Assembly (NCBI RefSeq): GCF_033153115.1
Contig: NW_026889805.1
Coordinates: forward strand, 15,190,001-15,254,000
DNA length: 64,000 nt
Origin: Saccostrea echinata
Lineage: Eukaryota
Direction of reading: 5' to 3'
Below, one piece after another: positions 8,953-61,409 of the stretch. Each line of letters opens with the position of its first letter. Position 1 is the stretch's first letter. The notes below the pieces were generated by a model. The model saw only the letters and a program-made list of their open reading frames with translations, did not search any database and had not been told where the DNA came from. The translations under genes were made by a program, and so were the position numbers.

Positions 8953-10143
8953 ATGGAAAACTACATAATCGAAACATCAAATACAGTAGAAGAATGGAAC
9001 AGTAAACTAGCCAGGATCCTAATTCCCAATAATGTGATCCTGTCTCTGTATATGATTGCAGGATTGGTAGGAAATTCTGCCGTGATTTTCATTTACGGAT
9101 TTAAGATGAAAGGCAACAAAATAAAGGGAAACAAAGAAGAAAGATATTTCATTCCATTTCTTGCCACTGCTGATCTTTGTGCCACACTCGTTTGTGCTTC
9201 ATTTGGAATCGCTCAAAATATAATGCAGGCGACATTTGATAATGAACCTTTGTGTAAAACTTGGTGGTTTTTTGCTGGCTTCACCACGTTAATATCAGTA
9301 TTTTTCCTTGTAGTCATTGCTGTACACAGATACCTAAAGGACTGCAAACCTCTAGGAAAACAAATGACATTGAGGTGGAAATGGTTCGCCTTGGGTTTGT
9401 GTCTAGTAATTGCATTCCCATTAGCTGGACCCATGACCCATTTTTATGGATCAGAATCTTTCCTTAACGAAGAAATGAAGATCTACGGACGCCGATGTGG
9501 CAGATTGAGTACCACAAACAAAACGAGTTCTTTGATATTCGGAGGTACTCTTGTTCTCACAGCGATCACAATTATTATTGTGTTAATTTGTCTATATTCC
9601 AAAGTAGGATACACTATTTTTGTACATTTTAAGTATACGAAGGTTGTTGGAAATCACAATAAAACAGAACATTCTCGGGGTGGGGTCTCCAGTGGGGACG
9701 ACCCCTACAGTAAATCTGAAATGAGTTCCTTTGAGACTCTCGAGACACCCACTGCCGGAATGTCCTCTGTGTACTTCACTCAGACTACCACGCAACAAAC
9801 GGAGACACCAGTTAATATAGAAGTGAGAGAAAAACATGTTCCAAAACAGTCAAGTAGAAAGCGGAGAAGAAATAAGAGAATTGTTCATAAATTTACATTG
9901 ATGTTCATGCTGATTACGGTCATATTTCTTATTTGCTATATCCCTAAAGTTATTATCATGCTTCTGGAGGCGAGTAACACAAAGTTTTGGGAGGGATTTT
10001 CTGAAGCTGGCAGATCTGCAGTGTCTTTTGTTTACAGGATTTACATACTAAACAATGTCACAAATCCATTTATATATGCCTTTTTAGACAAGAAATTTTC
10101 AGAGCAAATTAAAAAGTTGATTAAATCTTGTACTTGTAAGTAA
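8953..10143 (+). CDS. Class A (rhodopsin-like) GPCR, subfamily A, copy 1
   Basis: Seven hydrophobic segments; TM1 GLVGNS, TM2 LATADL, TM3 AVHRY, TM6 FLICYIP, TM7 NNVTNPFIY. ATG at 8953 (MENY) aligns with paralog starts; an in-frame upstream ATG at 8902 is possible. Confidence 0.95.
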   Translation: MENYIIETSNTVEEWNSKLARILIPNNVILSLYMIAGLVGNSAVIFIYGFKMKGNKIKGNKEERYFIPFLATADLCATLVCASFGIAQNIMQATFDNEPLCKTWWFFAGFTTLISVFFLVVIAVHRYLKDCKPLGKQMTLRWKWFALGLCLVIAFPLAGPMTHFYGSESFLNEEMKIYGRRCGRLSTTNKTSSLIFGGTLVLTAITIIIVLICLYSKVGYTIFVHFKYTKVVGNHNKTEHSRGGVSSGDDPYSKSEMSSFETLETPTAGMSSVYFTQTTTQQTETPVNIEVREKHVPKQSSRKRRRNKRIVHKFTLMFMLITVIFLICYIPKVIIMLLEASNTKFWEGFSEAGRSAVSFVYRIYILNNVTNPFIYAFLDKKFSEQIKKLIKSCTCK

Positions 10144-10671
10144 GCGCAGTTCAGTCAATCATAAAACAAGCATGTCTTTTTTTCCAATTTGATATAAATT
10201 GTTCACCTTGATTTTCCATTTTCGGTAAAAGCAAAAATCTTAGGAGAAGATGTTGATAAGATTGACGAACAATATAATCAGTACCGTTACTGTTGTCTGT
10301 TAATGTTTTCATAATGACAAGGATTGGAAAAATCTAAAGTTTCATGCTATCGTGTTTATTAAAAAATTGTTTTTCTGAAACAGCATTTAGTCTGTCATTT
10401 ATTCATCTGTAGGGATGATTTTTATTTGTGTTTCCTGTTAAAAATTATTGCAAATTATTGTCCTAAATCATGTATGCCAAATACGATTTTAATGTTACAT
10501 GTCTTTTTTAATAAGTGTTGTCCAGTAAACTTGTTCTACTATCTTTTTTCCAAAGCAGGAATGATGGGCAATAGCTAATTTATACATTTTAAATCTAAGC
10601 ACAATGAAAATAAATTTTGATTTCAAAATATTGTTTCAAAAAGCTATGGCTTTCTTAAATCGTATTAATCA

Positions 10672-11400
10672 AAATGTAAAGATATCATAATCAAGTTCGA
10701 AAATTCAATTAAAACAATACAAACTGAGAACAGAGCAAACAGGACCCCTTAAAAGATCAGAGATGGGATCACGAGTCGTGGAGAAGTAAGCATTCCCTGT
10801 CGACCAGTCCCCGCCTTGAACACTTTGTTTTGACAGTGTGAAGGGAGTAATTCGTAGACAGTTTGTAAAATGTGATCAAATTAAGGTTCCATTAAGAGCC
10901 TATGGAAATTCCAACAGATTGTTGGAAGACCTGGTGTACGTAGATACTGTCATTGATGGTCAATGAATTTTTAATATCACCTTCAGAGTACTTCTGTGTA
11001 GATTCAGAATGATTTTAAAGTAACTTTGTAGATTAGCTCTTGACGAAGCAGTTGTTTATTTCAAAATTCTTGGAAGTTCTGTCTCGGAATGGTTGTATTG
11101 TTGAAAAATAGTACGCTTTGGTTTTGATGCTAATAAGAAATGGGATGTCAAATTTTCTAAAAGTTTTCTTTACCCACTATTTATAAACATCTCTTCTCGA
11201 ATATGTTGTCGCACGATACTGCTGAGGTTTCTCCTCAACTGCTGTAAATTTTTTTTTGTGAGGAGTAAAGAAAGAAGCTTGGTAAAACAATCACCTTTTA
11301 TATATATTTGTGATAAGTTTGTAATCCAGTAAAGAAATGGTAATTGAGATTTAATTTTATTGTTGGAAATATTGATAGTATTCAAACTGACATATAATTT
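10672..11400 (-). mobile_element. Penelope-like retroelement fragment
   Basis: LPFLYWI..L motif (ORF 11170-11385), GI.MG-like segment and the 3' end shared with other copies. Confidence 0.7.
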
Positions 11401-58880: not shown

Positions 58881-60200
58881 AATAAGGTAACGTACTGACC
58901 TGAAACGAAGTAAAATTGCTCCCAGAATCTATAAAGCATGTGTAATAATATTAGAAACCAGAGGACACTGAGGGGGAGGAAGGGCGTGGCCCCCTAATTT
59001 TGCCAATAGGTATCATAAAATAGAAAATAATAGAAAACGTAGCTTCTTTATGGTTGTGCGTCTTTAATAATAACCTGAATATTGAGAGAAACAATGAGTA
59101 CAAAAATGACCTAGATTCTTTAAATAATTTATAAATCGACAAATATTAAAGTCTGATGAACCTCTAATTGGAGAGATAACTTTCAAAGAATATTACCGAA
59201 AATTCTCTTTTTCGTGTGACCCTCTATGCACTAAAGAATAATGTTTTTAGGCACTAAGACTGATTCTTTTTTTACTTCCTTTGCGAGAATGGTACGTCAC
59301 TATAAACCGGTGAAAGGCCAATACTCGATACTGACCAGTGAGAGTTCTTCATCGTGCTAACGCCTACCATGACACGGAACCTCGGTATTTAAGGTCTCAT
59401 CCGAAAGATCCGTAACTCTCACTTCTAATGCCGAACGCTTTGCGAAGGAACAGACACTGTATGTGTTTTTAAATCTGAGGGTTGACGCTGCGTCGGGAAC
59501 GAGAATCAACCCTGCACCTCCCGATCACGAAACGAGCGCCTTACCATAGGGTTACAGTGAACGGTAGACATTGAGAAAACTTTATTATATAAAAGTGTAA
59601 ATATAGAACTTATCTATTTTATTTTCAAAGGTACCTGGTAGGAAAATTGTTCTAAGACAATGAAGTATTGATAAACAGAAATAACTGTTGTTTACTGAAG
59701 TGGGGAAAATGCATGCAAATGAAATGTTCAGTCCATTTCGATTGGCCTATTAAAGGGCTAAGAATGCTTGAGTTAATTGCAAATTGAGCAATAGACTTCA
59801 GATTCAATTTATTTTACTAAAAGTCAAAAGGCAGATTACTCTATTTGCGTTAAAATACCACAGAATCGGAACTCTGTAATGAGCAGTGTATTAAGGGTTC
59901 TAAAAAATTTTAAAGATCTGTTGTCTCTATTATGGTTTGCTTTTGCTATTACCTTAATGTATTTGTTTCCTTTTTTTGTTTTTAAACAAGTAAAAAATAT
60001 CTTTTGATCACAAGATACTTAAAGAAAACAAAAAATTAAAAGGTACACTAAAAAGATGTTATATAAGGAAAGGAAGCTTTGACGTTTGATAGACTGATGC
60101 AGGTTTATATACATGTACGTTATAAAAAAAAATAATTTCAATTTTAATTTTTTTTAAAACCAAGAAAATAACTTTCAAACAAACCAGTTTGGAAAAAGAG

Positions 60201-61409
60201 ATGGATAACGAGACGTTTATCTTGGAGAAATTGGAAAAGTGGAATAGAGAGCTAGCAGAAAGTTTGATCATCGATAATGTGATTTTGTCTTTGTATATAA
60301 TAGTAGGACTGTTGGGGAATTCTACAGTTATTAGTATCTACGGTTTTGTGATGAAAGGCGACAACGAAGATAGGTATTTTATTCCGTTCCTTGCTGCTGT
60401 GGACCTATGCACTTGTCTTCTTGGCTCTTCATTTGGAATTGCTCTCAACGTGTTCCCGGTGAAATTTGAAAACGAATTTGCATGTAAAGTTCTGAAATCC
60501 CTAGTGCCGTTTTTTACATTTACGTCCGTGTTATTTCTTTTAATTATCGCTGTTCACAGATATCTCAAGGTCTGCAAACCGTTTGGAAAACAAATGACGT
60601 TAAAGTGGAAACAGTTTTCAATGTGCTTGGCTTCGATCATAGCACTAGTATTATCTTTACCTATGATTTATTTTTATCGATCAGTGTCCATTCCAAATAC
60701 TGAAGAAGGAATTGTAGGGTGGCGATGCAGCGCGTCAAAATCTGCCAATAAAACACTGTCCCTGATTTATGGAGGCGTCCTTCTTATTGCAACAATCATA
60801 ATAATTATTTCACTAGTTATCCTGTATTCCAGTATAGGGTATACTATTCTGGTACATTTCAACAATGCCAAGACCATTAACAAGAAGAAAAATTGCTCAG
60901 AGGAAGAAAATTCAAATGACGTCTATAAGTTGCAAAATCCAATTTCGAGCCAAGGTGATCCACATAGTAAAGTAGAGAATAAAACATATTCAAGTAAGAC
61001 GGACATCATAGAATTATCCGGTAATTATTCTATTCCTCAAACATCCCCAACGACGACAGGGAAAATTTGTAATAAAAGAACGACACTTGAAGAGACTGCA
61101 AATCATCAGATGTCAAGTGCAACACAACAAATGCAAAAACGAAACAGGGCAGTTGTGCATAAGTTTACCCTTATGTTTATGCTTATAACCGTCATTTTCT
61201 TCGTCTGTTATATTCCAAAGGTTATCCTTTTGCTGCTAGAAGCCAGGAATCCTAAATTCTGGGAGGAACTCTCAGATTCTGCAAGGGCTGGCGTTGTGTT
61301 TGTGTACCGAATGTACATAATAAACAATATCACAAATCCGTTCATTTATGCATTCTTAGACAACAAGTTTGCAACAGAAATCAAGAAGTTAATTAAAATG
61401 TGTCGGTAA
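60201..61409 (+). CDS. Class A GPCR, subfamily B, copy 4
   Basis: ATG at 60201 (MDNETF) aligns with paralog starts (ORF track begins at TTG 60189); 7TM, AVHRY, CYIP, NNITNPFIY. Confidence 0.96.
   Translation: MDNETFILEKLEKWNRELAESLIIDNVILSLYIIVGLLGNSTVISIYGFVMKGDNEDRYFIPFLAAVDLCTCLLGSSFGIALNVFPVKFENEFACKVLKSLVPFFTFTSVLFLLIIAVHRYLKVCKPFGKQMTLKWKQFSMCLASIIALVLSLPMIYFYRSVSIPNTEEGIVGWRCSASKSANKTLSLIYGGVLLIATIIIIISLVILYSSIGYTILVHFNNAKTINKKKNCSEEENSNDVYKLQNPISSQGDPHSKVENKTYSSKTDIIELSGNYSIPQTSPTTTGKICNKRTTLEETANHQMSSATQQMQKRNRAVVHKFTLMFMLITVIFFVCYIPKVILLLLEARNPKFWEELSDSARAGVVFVYRMYIINNITNPFIYAFLDNKFATEIKKLIKMCR

What the first reader, a model, noticed from the sequence alone, without database searches (positions are those of the whole stretch)
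8953..61409. Lineage-expanded tandem array of orphan class A GPCRs with HRY/NRY/QRY motif: candidate chemoreceptor cluster
Seen: seven intact GPCRs with intronless ORFs and two same-strand pseudogenes, plus one inverted fragment, over about 52 kb. They form three subfamilies (A: 8953, 33615; B: 35865, 44027, 50054, 60201; C: 15447). All have short N-termini and share RYFIP.L..D, FTLMFMLIT and NPFIY-type motifs. Established: intronless, clustered, birth-and-death GPCR arrays are the hallmark of vertebrate OR/TAAR/V1R chemoreceptors, whereas endocrine peptide receptors are usually low-copy. Inference: this is an independently expanded molluscan chemosensory (e.g. settlement cue, spawning cue or microbial product) receptor family that similarity-based annotation could mislabel as a peptide receptor.
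Basis: partly seen in the sequence, partly recalled or inferred. Interest (0 to 1): 0.8.

Follow-up and report, generated by a model that had tools for sequence, protein, structure and literature searches.

The report
Oyster orphan GPCR gene array
This is a real row of related receptor genes in a rock oyster genome, of a kind already described in bivalves as candidate smell or taste receptors, and what these receptors detect is still unknown.

Summary
The window (Saccostrea echinata, C56:15190001-15254000) has seven intact, same-strand, single-ORF class A GPCR genes at the stated coordinates. It also has one clear pseudogene (26396-28107), one inverted 5' fragment (38073-38256) and one marginal relic (11924-12187). 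Both N gaps inside the finding are intergenic.

The array continues about 62 kb past the window, to roughly 11 intact genes.

The family was found only in pteriomorph bivalves wherever a hit had a name. Mussels, the pearl-oyster group and oysters each form their own clade, and orthology appears only within Saccostrea. All paralogue pairs are under purifying selection (dN/dS 0.11-0.41).

The fold and nearest solved structures are peptide-receptor-like (orexin, NPY, CCK, NPFF). No specific orthology shows, so names such as "cholecystokinin receptor-like" look like best-hit labels.

The pocket has an invariant charged TM6/TM7 face and a TM2-TM5 face that differs by subfamily.

A chemosensory role could not be tested: the only runs found are contigs of unknown tissue. 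Nath et al. 2025 (PMC11886862) already describe tandem lineage-specific class A GPCR expansions in bivalves, Ostreida included, as candidate chemoreceptors. This is therefore a new member of a known kind.

The parts
8953..10143 (+). GPCR gene A1 (396 aa, HRY); the likely start is the ATG at 8953, by homology to A2
   Evidence: ORF; 7tm_1 E 1.4e-27; identical to P0003; sister to S. cucullata P0004 with support 100/99
8913..8921 (+). Conserved upstream motif AGGAAGCTC, 32-40 nt before the A1 ATG
   Evidence: 3 matches in the window against 0.45 expected; 0 of 100 shuffles reach 3
11924..12187 (+). Marginal GPCR-like relic (TM1-TM3 region); may be chance
   Evidence: tblastn E 3.7e-4 with A2 only; no Pfam hit; not found by the family profile
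15447..16610 (+). GPCR gene C (387 aa, QRY; P6.50 replaced by T)
   Evidence: groups with two copies outside the window with support 100/100
20029..20194 (.). Assembly gap, intergenic, flanked by inverted repeats
   Evidence: 19655-20025 and 20295-20732 match 22371-21721 in reverse at 84-88%
26396..28107 (+). Pseudogene: TM1-5 pieces at 26396-27022 and TM6-7 pieces at 27850-28107, with several stops and frame changes
   Evidence: (9 stops)
33586..33594 (+). Conserved upstream motif AGGAAGATC, 21-29 nt before the A2 ATG
33615..34796 (+). GPCR gene A2 (393 aa, HRY); the copy used for the model and the searches
   Evidence: (AF2 pLDDT 82, pTM 0.78)
35865..37052 (+). GPCR gene B1 (395 aa, NRY)
   Evidence: Contigs of 4 of 4 runs cover 36574-37430, the 3' end and just beyond; whether those runs are RNA is not known
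38073..38256 (-). Inverted partial copy of the A2 5' end: about 68 nt upstream sequence plus the first 43-44 codons, including the upstream motif at 38209-38217
   Evidence: 87.8% over 197 nt
42424..42556 (.). Assembly gap, intergenic, 1.5 kb upstream of B2
44027..45271 (+). GPCR gene B2 (414 aa, HRY)
   Evidence: sister to two S. cucullata genes
50054..51301 (+). GPCR gene B3 (415 aa, HRY). It has the highest dN/dS in its pairs and departs at W342L and Y357S (Y7.39S)
60201..61409 (+). GPCR gene B4 (402 aa, HRY)
   Evidence: sister to S. cucullata P0063, support 100/99

Best explanation
The region is the left half of a tandem, same-strand array about 115 kb long. Its genes are single-coding-exon class A (rhodopsin-like) GPCRs of the rock oyster Saccostrea echinata. 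They belong to an orphan family seen here only in pteriomorph bivalves.

The family grows and shrinks by tandem and segmental duplication followed by decay (birth-and-death). The intact copies are working seven-helix receptors under purifying selection.

The fold is that of peptide-type receptors. One face of the ligand pocket (TM6/TM7: K6.51, E6.58, R7.32, Y7.39, Y7.42) is the same in all members. The other face (TM2-TM5) differs between subfamilies.

The most likely working is therefore a set of receptors that hold a shared, probably charged or peptide-like, part of their ligands with the fixed face, and tell related ligands apart with the variable face. They would then signal through G proteins. 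The acidic residue of the DRY motif is replaced by H, N or Q, and there is no E6.30, so the usual ionic lock is missing.

Shown: the array, the family, its phylogeny, the selection pattern and the pocket pattern. Inferred: ligand class and signalling.

Whether the ligands come from the water (chemosensory) or from the animal itself was not tested. My odds are about 0.4 external cues, 0.35 endogenous peptides and 0.25 other roles. The confidence given here (0.85) is for the lineage-expanded orphan GPCR array, not for the chemosensory role.
For: - Gene content: 7 of 7 long ORFs are 7tm_1 GPCRs.
- Extent: the array runs on to C56:15313896, with 4 more intact copies, 2 copies in two frames and further fragments.
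- Species: three own-genome translations are identical to NCBI proteins named for S. echinata.
- Tree of 88 rows: family clade 100/99; Mytilus clade of 17 rows; clade of 8 rows holding Pinctada; oyster clade of 39 rows at 100/100. B1-B4 group only with S. cucullata genes (100/100), and there is an Ostrea edulis clade of 5 paralogues.
- Range: every named hit is a pteriomorph bivalve, among the 98 proteins and in 3 of 3 named clusters out of 10 looked up.
- Selection: dN/dS is 0.11-0.41 in 14 of 14 pairs; dS is 0.48-1.07 within subfamilies, apart from one recent pair at 0.077.
- Homology between paralogues in the window stops within 1-7 nt of the ATG, as expected of old duplicates.
- Structure: AF2 model pLDDT 82, with an ECL2 hairpin and ICL3 residues 240-288 disordered. 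The best Foldseek matches are OX1R, NPY Y4, CCK1R and PrRPR at 15-19% identity.
- The family profile scores NPFF2R, CCK1R, OX2R, PrRPR and QRFPR almost equally, at 78-86 bits.
- Pocket census: K6.51 and E6.58 in 46 of 46, R7.32 in 44 of 46, Y7.39 in 45 of 46, while 3.28, 3.29, 3.32, 3.33, 2.60, 2.64, 5.42 and 5.46 differ by subfamily.
- Entropy: extracellular TM halves 1.02 against intracellular halves 0.86 (one-sided MWU p 0.033); pocket positions 1.08 against other TM positions 0.90 (p 0.045).
Against: - No ligand, coupling or expression data exist for any member.
- The entropy contrasts are weak (p 0.03-0.05), and no region reaches dN/dS > 1, so ligand-driven diversification is not shown.
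- The list of pocket positions is recalled from general GPCR knowledge, and the numbering rests on my own anchors.
- 46 of the 88 tree rows carry no species name. Homologues were gathered with one query (A2) through a word-based search, so relatives outside Pteriomorphia, and relatives of subfamily C, may have been missed.
- Only 10 of the 150 best representative hits were looked up for names.
- The missing D/E3.49, W4.50 and, in subfamily C, P6.50 could mean unusual or weakened signalling.
Confidence: 0.85

Rival explanations
1. External chemoreceptors. The paralogues are expressed in sensory cells of the mantle edge, palps, gill or larval foot. They detect waterborne cues such as settlement, spawning, food or microbial compounds.
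For: - Tandem single-exon genes with pseudogenes and lineage-specific clades. These are the criteria used for candidate chemoreceptors in Aplysia (PMC2700072, passages) and across Lophotrochozoa (PMC11886862, sections 5, 11 and 22).
- Variation concentrates on one pocket face.
- No 90% cluster of a window protein that one search lists (A1, A2, B2, B3, B4) holds a second sequence. Only patchy low-depth contigs lie on A2 and B1. Both fit rare-cell or low expression.
Against: - Expression in sensory tissue is untested.
- ICL3 is 74-104 aa and Ser/Thr-rich, and the TM3-ECL2 cysteines are kept in 45 of 46 sequences. Nath et al. report that their expansions generally lack that linkage.
- ECL3 and the TM6/TM7 face are conserved from mussels to oysters.
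- Duplicates are old and constrained. Copy number is modest, at about 13 in the array.
Confidence: 0.4
2. Receptors for endogenous peptides or hormones. A bivalve-specific branch of peptide-type GPCRs has multiplied together with lineage-specific peptide families.
For: - The nearest sequences and folds are all peptide receptors.
- The model has an ECL2 beta-hairpin, and the disulfide cysteines are kept.
- Extracellular residues W15, N16, R177, K328, E335, W342 and R350 are invariant or nearly so across 46 sequences.
- dN/dS is 0.11-0.41.
- By its title (listing only), PMC11589774 reports an expansion of FMRFamide-like receptors in Lymnaea.
Against: - No orthologue was seen outside pteriomorph bivalves.
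- The family profile shows no preference for one peptide-receptor family.
- The genes lack the conserved coding intron and the E/DRY motif of the true oyster CCK receptors (PMC6219549, passages).
- Copy number differs between genera, with pseudogenes present.
Confidence: 0.35
3. Sensors of microbial or metabolic acids, or an immune-type role. The fixed basic residues would bind carboxylates or other anions, as in succinate, hydroxycarboxylic-acid or formyl-peptide-type receptors.
For: - K6.51, R7.32 and R177 in ECL2 are conserved.
- HCAR2 is among the profile hits.
- One paralogue is auto-named succinate receptor 1-like.
Against: - These hits score lower than the peptide receptors.
- The name is only a best-hit label.
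- There are no expression or ligand data.
- E6.58 is equally invariant, so the pocket is not simply basic.
Confidence: 0.1
4. Largely decaying or silent copies: open reading frames kept by chance or recent origin, with no present function.
For: - Pseudogene and fragments sit among the genes.
- The canonical D/E3.49 and W4.50 are lost.
- No assembled full-length transcripts were found.
Against: - dN/dS is well below 1 in all 14 pairs at dS 0.5-1.
- Six of the 7 window genes show 0-4 departures at the 80 columns that are at least 90% conserved; C, a divergent subfamily, shows 13.
- The H/Q/N3.49 state is shared by all 46 family members from several orders, so it is an old, retained trait.
Confidence: 0.03

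Closest known systems
[quoted passage not shown] 2025, PMC11886862; abstract and sections 5, 11 and 22 read, plus term passages)
   Same: Tandem clusters of class A GPCRs in bivalves, Ostreida included. They show taxon-specific paralogue clades, a mix of full-length genes and pseudogenes, and more variable extracellular TM segments. Orthology appears mainly within genera.
   Different: - Saccostrea does not occur in the main text (0 hits), and the supplements were closed.
- This family keeps the TM3-ECL2 cysteine pair, which that paper reports as generally absent.
- It lacks the acidic DRY residue, and it has an invariant charged TM6/TM7 face.
- It is traceable across three bivalve orders, so it is older than a species-level expansion.
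Aplysia candidate chemosensory receptors AcCRa, AcCRb and AcCRc (Cummins et al. 2009, PMC2700072; passages read)
   Same: Molluscan rhodopsin-like GPCR families of mostly single-exon genes, clustered a few kb apart in the same orientation, with pseudogenes.
   Different: The Aplysia genes were shown to be expressed in rhinophore and oral tentacles; here there are no tissue data. Their signature motif differs, by the paper's text.
Peptide-type class A receptors with solved structures (NPFF2R, CCK1R, OX1R/OX2R, PrRPR, QRFPR, NPY Y4)
   Same: Best sequence and fold matches. They share the ECL2 beta-hairpin, the TM3-ECL2 cysteines, NPxxY, D2.50 and N1.50.
   Different: Identity is only 15-19%, and scores are nearly equal for several families (78-86 bits), so no orthology shows. 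The window genes have HRY/NRY/QRY instead of D/ERY, no W4.50, Y/F at 6.48, and a single coding exon.
True oyster CCK/sulfakinin receptors Cragi-CCKR1 and Cragi-CCKR2 (Schwartz et al. 2018, PMC6219549; passages read)
   Same: Oyster class A GPCRs. The window genes' relatives are often auto-named after CCK receptors.
   Different: By the paper, Cragi-CCKRs have the E/DRY motif, 26.7-31.5% identity to human CCKRs, and an intron at a position conserved with vertebrate and insect genes. The window genes have H/N/Q-RY, an uninterrupted ORF and 17-18% identity to CCK1R chains in the Foldseek alignments.
Vertebrate OR, TAAR and V1R arrays
   Same: Analogy only: single-exon coding regions, tandem arrays, birth-and-death evolution. 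As recalled for TAARs, they also have a fixed anchor residue beside a variable remainder of the pocket.
   Different: These are not the same families. Pfam 7tm_4 scores 18.7-20.5 bits against a cut-off of 27, in 3 of 7 genes. ICL3 is long here. There is no D3.32.

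Membership tests
Class A (rhodopsin-like) GPCR, Pfam PF00001 | Full-length match to the 7tm_1 profile above the gathering score | tested here: met
   7 of 7 genes score 94.8-117.5 bits against 30.5, over profile positions 1-260
Class A (rhodopsin-like) GPCR, Pfam PF00001 | Seven-helix fold with helix 8 | tested here: met
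   AF2 model of A2 has pLDDT 82 and pTM 0.78, with seven long helices and H8. At least 500 PDB GPCR chains match at E <= 0.001
Class A (rhodopsin-like) GPCR, Pfam PF00001 | Conserved microswitch residues N1.50, D2.50, R3.50, Y5.58 and NPxxY (motif list recalled) | tested here: met
   N41, D69, R121, Y122, Y211 and Y371 in 46 of 46; N7.49 and P7.50 in 45 of 46
Class A (rhodopsin-like) GPCR, Pfam PF00001 | Acidic residue at 3.49 (D/E of DRY), W4.50 and W6.48 (recalled as typical, not obligatory) | tested here: not met
   3.49 is H in 34, Q in 10 and N in 2 of 46. 4.50 is L, I, V, F or M. 6.48 is Y in 39 and F in 4. Subfamily C has T at 6.50. These are departures within the superfamily, not grounds for exclusion
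CCK/sulfakinin receptor family | Intron at the position conserved in chordate, insect and oyster CCKR genes (PMC6219549) | tested here: not met
   All 7 coding regions are uninterrupted ORFs spanning the whole 7tm_1 profile
CCK/sulfakinin receptor family | E/DRY motif, and specific similarity to CCKRs above other peptide receptors | tested here: not met
   Motif is H/N/Q-RY. The family profile gives NPFF2R 85.9, CCK1R 85.9, OX2R 81.0 and PrRPR 80.7 bits. Subfamily C hits orexin receptors first
CCK/sulfakinin receptor family | Grouping with deorphanised CCK/SK receptors in a tree | not tested
Lophotrochozoan class A lineage-specific expansions (candidate chemoreceptors, Nath et al. 2025) | Tandem clustering in the genome | tested here: met
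   All copies lie on the + strand of one contig over about 115 kb. Six S. cucullata homologues share one 323,284-bp contig
Lophotrochozoan class A lineage-specific expansions (candidate chemoreceptors, Nath et al. 2025) | Taxon-specific paralogue clades without one-to-one orthologues between orders or families | tested here: met
   There are separate Mytilus, Pinctada-group and oyster clades, a Saccostrea-only B clade and an O. edulis clade of 5. Caveat: group A has one O. edulis counterpart, and several genes have S. cucullata orthologues
Lophotrochozoan class A lineage-specific expansions (candidate chemoreceptors, Nath et al. 2025) | Higher variability of the extracellular TM segments and loops | tested here: inconclusive
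   Entropy is 1.02 against 0.86, p 0.033. It is higher in TM2, TM3, TM4, TM6 and TM7 but lower in TM1 and TM5. No region has dN/dS above 1
Lophotrochozoan class A lineage-specific expansions (candidate chemoreceptors, Nath et al. 2025) | Expression in chemosensory tissue (needed for a chemoreceptor, not for an expansion) | not testable with these tools
Biogenic amine receptors | Aspartate at 3.32 (recalled) | tested here: not met
   3.32 is A, V, T or M in the 11 paralogues. In the family of 46 it is A in 30, V in 5, S in 4, G in 3 and T in 2
Vertebrate olfactory receptors, Pfam PF13853 (7tm_4) | Match above the gathering score | tested here: not met
   18.7-20.5 bits against a cut-off of 27, in 3 of 7 genes, and no hit in the other 4

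The most novel reading that the evidence does not exclude
The family is a pteriomorph-bivalve chemoreceptor family built on a TAAR-like logic. An invariant charged anchor (K6.51, E6.58, R7.32, with Y7.39 and Y7.42) would grip the common zwitterionic or charged end of waterborne amino acids or short peptides. The subfamily-specific TM2-TM5 face would read the rest of the ligand. The paralogues of this array would then discriminate settlement, spawning or food cues. The natural H/N/Q at 3.49 would give unusually easy activation.
Probability: 0.15. Interest if true: 0.6.

Novelty: new member of a known kind. Interest (0 to 1): 0.3.

Why it matters
Oysters settle, spawn and feed in response to dissolved cues, yet no bivalve chemoreceptor has a known ligand. 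This array gives a compact, well-defined set of candidates:
- 7 intact genes in the window and about 11 in the whole array;
- clear subfamilies, and orthologues in a sister species;
- a short list of pocket positions that differ between subfamilies, next to an invariant charged face.

That makes a heterologous ligand screen and in situ work straightforward to design for an aquaculture species. It also shows that public names such as "cholecystokinin receptor-like" for these genes should not be used to infer endocrine function.

As a genomic phenomenon it is already described, so the value is as a worked example, not a discovery.

Tried and rejected
Expression. The look-up of sequencing runs found 4 small runs from one study, none on record as RNA, with shares of 0.10-0.14. 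Read laying (5501 letters) showed only short, low-depth contigs.
- 4 of 4 runs cover 36574-37430, the 3' end of B1 and 380 nt beyond.
- A2 is covered in patches.
- Several non-repeat intergenic bins are empty in all runs: 33368-33551, 35392-35575 and 37968-38500. Two bins inside the B1 coding region are empty too (36128-36495).
This would fit weak transcription, but contigs cannot show it, the tissue is unknown, and no silent control could be laid. I draw no conclusion from it. PMC12564202 (passages) describes S. echinata RNA-seq of visceral ganglia and gonad. Whether the coded runs are those is unknown.

Rejected readings.
- True CCK receptor: see the membership test.
- Aminergic receptor: no D3.32.
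- Other genes or intact transposons between the GPCRs: there is no other ORF of at least 150 aa. Of 32 other open frames of at least 90 aa, I scanned 10; none reached a Pfam cut-off.
- Conserved promoters between paralogues: blastn similarity ends within 1-7 nt of the ATG. The only shared upstream element found is the 9-nt motif in A-type and D-type copies.
- B3 or other window genes as decaying: only 0-4 departures at 80 conserved columns.

Tree. The quick tree was replaced by the careful one. Of the 98 proteins, 8 were identical to own-genome rows and 21 were dropped for length (under 330 or over 480 aa). The two copies in two frames were left out of the tree.

Earlier notes and closed files. 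The search of earlier findings by words gave nothing on class A arrays.

Full report
**What is in the window**

The window is G000:C56:15190001-15254000, + strand. Three translations from this genome are letter-identical to NCBI proteins named for Saccostrea echinata (P0011, P0018 and P0030). The organism is therefore the black-lip rock oyster, and the genes already carry automatic names in the public annotation.

The ORF listing finds 7 ORFs of at least 150 aa in 64 kb. All 7 match Pfam 7tm_1 from profile position 1 to 260 at 94.8-117.5 bits, against a cut-off of 30.5. Each coding region is therefore a single exon. Untranslated 5' exons cannot be excluded.

The three N runs (1464-1620, 20029-20194, 42424-42556) are intergenic. 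No ORF, tblastn match or profile match touches them. Gap 20029-20194 sits among inverted repeats. Spacing and copy number across them remain unverified.

**Relics**

I scanned all stop-to-stop pieces of the six frames with a family profile. The scan finds a broken copy at 26396-27022 (TM1-5) and 27850-28107 (TM6-7); one search counts 9 stops inside it. It also finds an inverted piece at 38070-38156.

By blastn the inverted piece is 87.8% identical over 197 nt to A2, from 68 nt upstream of its ATG to about codon 43.

The weak tblastn match at 11924-12187 (E 3.7e-4 with A2, 0.022 with A1) is not found by the profile and has no Pfam match. I treat it as marginal.

**The array is larger than the window**

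The own-genome search and the fetched flanks show no copy in the 20 kb to the left. To the right there are four more intact genes, at window-equivalent 71418, 93593, 101123 and 116170.

Two further copies read in two frames (77317, 122710), and there are fragments at 65798, 91295 and 113023. All lie on the + strand, and the array ends at C56:15313896.

A recent segmental duplication copies a block of about 15 kb (90266-105320 onto 111477-126856) at 87-96% identity. Each two-frame copy has a 1-bp deletion in the same short T-rich stretch. These may be real lesions or homopolymer errors of the assembly.

A single related gene sits elsewhere, on C4. A near-identical twin on C43 differs by 1 aa and is probably a haplotig.

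Genome-wide, the first look gave 576 candidates, of which 105 were scored, with 112 matches at E <= 1e-10. This array is therefore one of many clusters of single-exon class A GPCRs in this genome.

**Family and phylogeny**

The search for homologous proteins with A2 gave 98 proteins. Every one with a species name is a pteriomorph bivalve: Saccostrea, Ostrea, Magallana/Crassostrea, Mytilus, Pinctada or scallops.

A profile search of 1.84 billion representatives gave 14,329 hits at E <= 0.001, 4,021 at 1e-10 and 1,071 at 1e-30. I looked up 10 of the best 150. Three clusters carried names, all pteriomorph bivalves: Magallana gigas, Mytilus coruscus and Pinctada imbricata.

The careful tree has 88 rows. 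It holds 19 rows from the own genome, including 7 distant paralogues as outgroups, and 69 database proteins. 46 rows have no species label. Its main results are:
- The family is recovered at 100/99.
- A Mytilus clade has 17 rows (100/98).
- A clade of 8 rows holds Pinctada (99/97).
- An oyster clade has 39 rows (100/100).

Inside the oyster clade:
- A1 pairs with S. cucullata P0004 (100/99). A2 is sister to that pair, and O. edulis P0005 is next.
- B1-B4 form a Saccostrea-only clade with three S. cucullata genes (100/100). It shows both shared duplications and ones specific to S. echinata.
- O. edulis has its own clade of five.

Subfamily C (15447 and two copies outside the window) is a long branch with no partner from another species in this sample.

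This is birth-and-death at the level of orders and genera, with orthology only between congeners. That is the pattern Nath et al. report for bivalve expansions. However, I could not add reference neuropeptide receptors to the tree.

**Selection**

Nei-Gojobori estimates on a codon alignment of the 11 intact paralogues give dN/dS of 0.11-0.41 in 14 of 14 pairs. dS is 0.48-1.07 within subfamilies, and one recent pair has 0.077.

By region, the disordered third intracellular loop is the least constrained (0.36-0.87). In the B clade the extracellular TM halves reach 0.51, against 0.13-0.27 for the intracellular halves. No region exceeds 1.

Column entropy is higher in the extracellular TM halves (1.02 against 0.86, p 0.033). 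TM3, TM4, ECL2 and the N-terminus vary most; TM6, TM7 and ECL3 vary least. The genes are thus functional and old, with only modest signs of diversification on the ligand side.

**Structure and motifs**

The AF2 model of A2, built with 46 family sequences, has pLDDT 82 and pTM 0.78. It shows:
- a short N-terminal helix;
- seven helices and helix 8;
- a two-strand hairpin in ECL2;
- a disordered ICL3 (residues 240-288 below pLDDT 50).

ICL3 is 74-104 aa and 21-28% Ser+Thr in the seven genes.

The best Foldseek matches are OX1R, NPY Y4, CCK1R, PrRPR, the ghrelin receptor and QRFPR, at 15-19% identity. The family profile scores NPFF2R, CCK1R, OX2R, PrRPR and QRFPR within 78-86 bits. A2 alone hits CCK1R first, and C hits OX1R first. 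Similarity is therefore to peptide-type receptors in general.

The ESM Atlas neighbours are mollusc clusters with mixed automatic names.

The census of key positions over the 46 family sequences (numbering by my anchors, position lists recalled) gives:

| Position | Residues found |
|---|---|
| N1.50, D2.50, R3.50, Y3.51, Y5.58, Y7.53 | 46 of 46 |
| C3.25 and the ECL2 Cys | 45 of 46 each |
| 3.49 | H 34, Q 10, N 2; never acidic |
| 4.50 | L, I, V, F or M; never W |
| 6.48 | Y 39, F 4 |
| 3.32 | never D |
| 6.30 | V, M, I or G |
| 6.50 in subfamily C | T |

In the pocket, K6.51 and E6.58 are present in 46 of 46, R7.32 in 44, Y7.39 in 45 and Y7.42 in 40 (the rest F). By contrast, 2.60, 2.64, 3.28, 3.29, 3.32, 3.33, 3.37, 5.35, 5.42, 5.46 and 5.47 differ cleanly between subfamilies A/D, B and C. 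For example, positions 3.28, 3.29, 3.32 and 3.33 read W-W-A-G/A in A/D, L/V-Q/H/K-V/T-P/M in B and G-N-M/V-V in C.

**Interpretation**

Shown: a lineage-expanded orphan class A GPCR array with functional copies.

Inferred: a fixed charged face plus a variable face suggests related ligands with a common moiety. The ECL2 hairpin and the nearest folds suggest peptide-like ligands. The absence of D/E3.49 and E6.30 suggests a weak inactive-state lock; this rests on general knowledge of DRY mutants, which I recall rather than tested.

Whether the ligands are external is open. The genomic hallmarks favour the chemosensory reading. So does the lack of assembled full-length transcripts: none of the five window proteins that one search lists (A1, A2, B2, B3, B4) has a second sequence in its 90% cluster.

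The long Ser/Thr-rich ICL3, the conserved extracellular residues from mussels to oysters, and the strong constraint favour an endogenous peptide system.

My odds are 0.4 external, 0.35 endogenous, 0.1 microbial, acid or immune sensing, and the rest other.

**Comparison with what is known**

- Nath et al. 2025 (PMC11886862; abstract, sections 5, 11 and 22 and term passages read) analysed 238 lophotrochozoan genomes. They report tandem lineage-specific class A expansions in 60 bivalves, with Ostreida among the notable ones, and propose them as candidate chemoreceptors. Saccostrea is not in the main text, and the supplements were closed.
- Cummins et al. 2009 (PMC2700072, passages) set the same criteria in Aplysia and added expression in sensory organs.
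- Audino et al. 2024 (PMC11682238; abstract and section 7) found putative chemosensory GPCRs in a bivalve tentacle transcriptome.
- Schwartz et al. 2018 (PMC6219549, passages) characterised the true oyster CCK receptors. These have E/DRY and a conserved coding intron, both absent here.

The finding is therefore a correct observation of a published kind of system. The particular family, its pocket pattern and its motif states are details I did not find in the texts I read. I did not search the literature specifically for them.

**Verdict**

Novelty: new member of a known kind. Interest: 0.3.

Noticed in passing
window-equivalent 64001-123896 (G000:C56:15254001-15313896; loci L001-L006): The array continues outside the window. 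There are 4 more intact genes, 2 copies in two frames and 3 fragments, all on the + strand. A block of about 15 kb (90266-105320) is duplicated at 111477-126856 at 87-96% identity.
   Followed up: yes
L002 and L006 (window-equivalent about 77790 and 123180): Two paralogues that are only about 74% identical to each other each carry a 1-bp deletion in the same short T-rich stretch at the end of TM4. This could be a mutational hotspot or a homopolymer error of the assembly.
   Followed up: partly
L004, window-equivalent 101123-102313: This intact copy has W in place of the conserved ECL2 cysteine, I in place of N7.49 and H at 6.48. Its 96%-identical twin keeps these residues but has the frame change. 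Each member of a young pair seems damaged in a different way.
   Followed up: partly
window 8913-8921 (+), 33586-33594 (+), 38209-38217 (-); also upstream of the D-type copies in L001, L002, L004 and L006: A shared motif AGGAAG[AC]TC lies 21-48 nt before the ATG of A-type and D-type genes and of the inverted fragment. There are 3 matches in the window against 0.45 expected. It could be the acceptor end of a 5' UTR intron (cag|GAAG) or an ETS-like promoter element.
   Followed up: partly
window 9128-9160 (A1, ICL1): A1 alone has five extra residues in ICL1, a direct repeat of KGNK(I): KMKGNKIKGNKEERY against KIKGNKEERY in A2. Another first-stage note (s1-810228) points at the same place.
   Followed up: partly
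window 35024-35207 and 37600-37783: Contigs of all four runs pile up here, with summed depths of hundreds to thousands and many loose ends. These are probably interspersed repeats between the GPCR genes.
   Followed up: no
window 1640-2299: A stretch of about 660 bp matches itself in reverse at 91.8%, so it is a palindrome. It lies directly after the N gap at 1464-1620.
   Followed up: no
L011 (C4:11983800-11986000) and L012 (C43:3225600-3227900): A lone family member outside the array occurs twice, with one amino-acid difference over a 462-codon open frame. These are probably two haplotype copies kept in the assembly.
   Followed up: partly
L010 (window-equivalent -19104 to -18131) and L007/L008 (130160-139346): Long tandem satellite arrays flank the region on both sides, seen as ladders of self-matches at 82-95% identity.
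   Followed up: no
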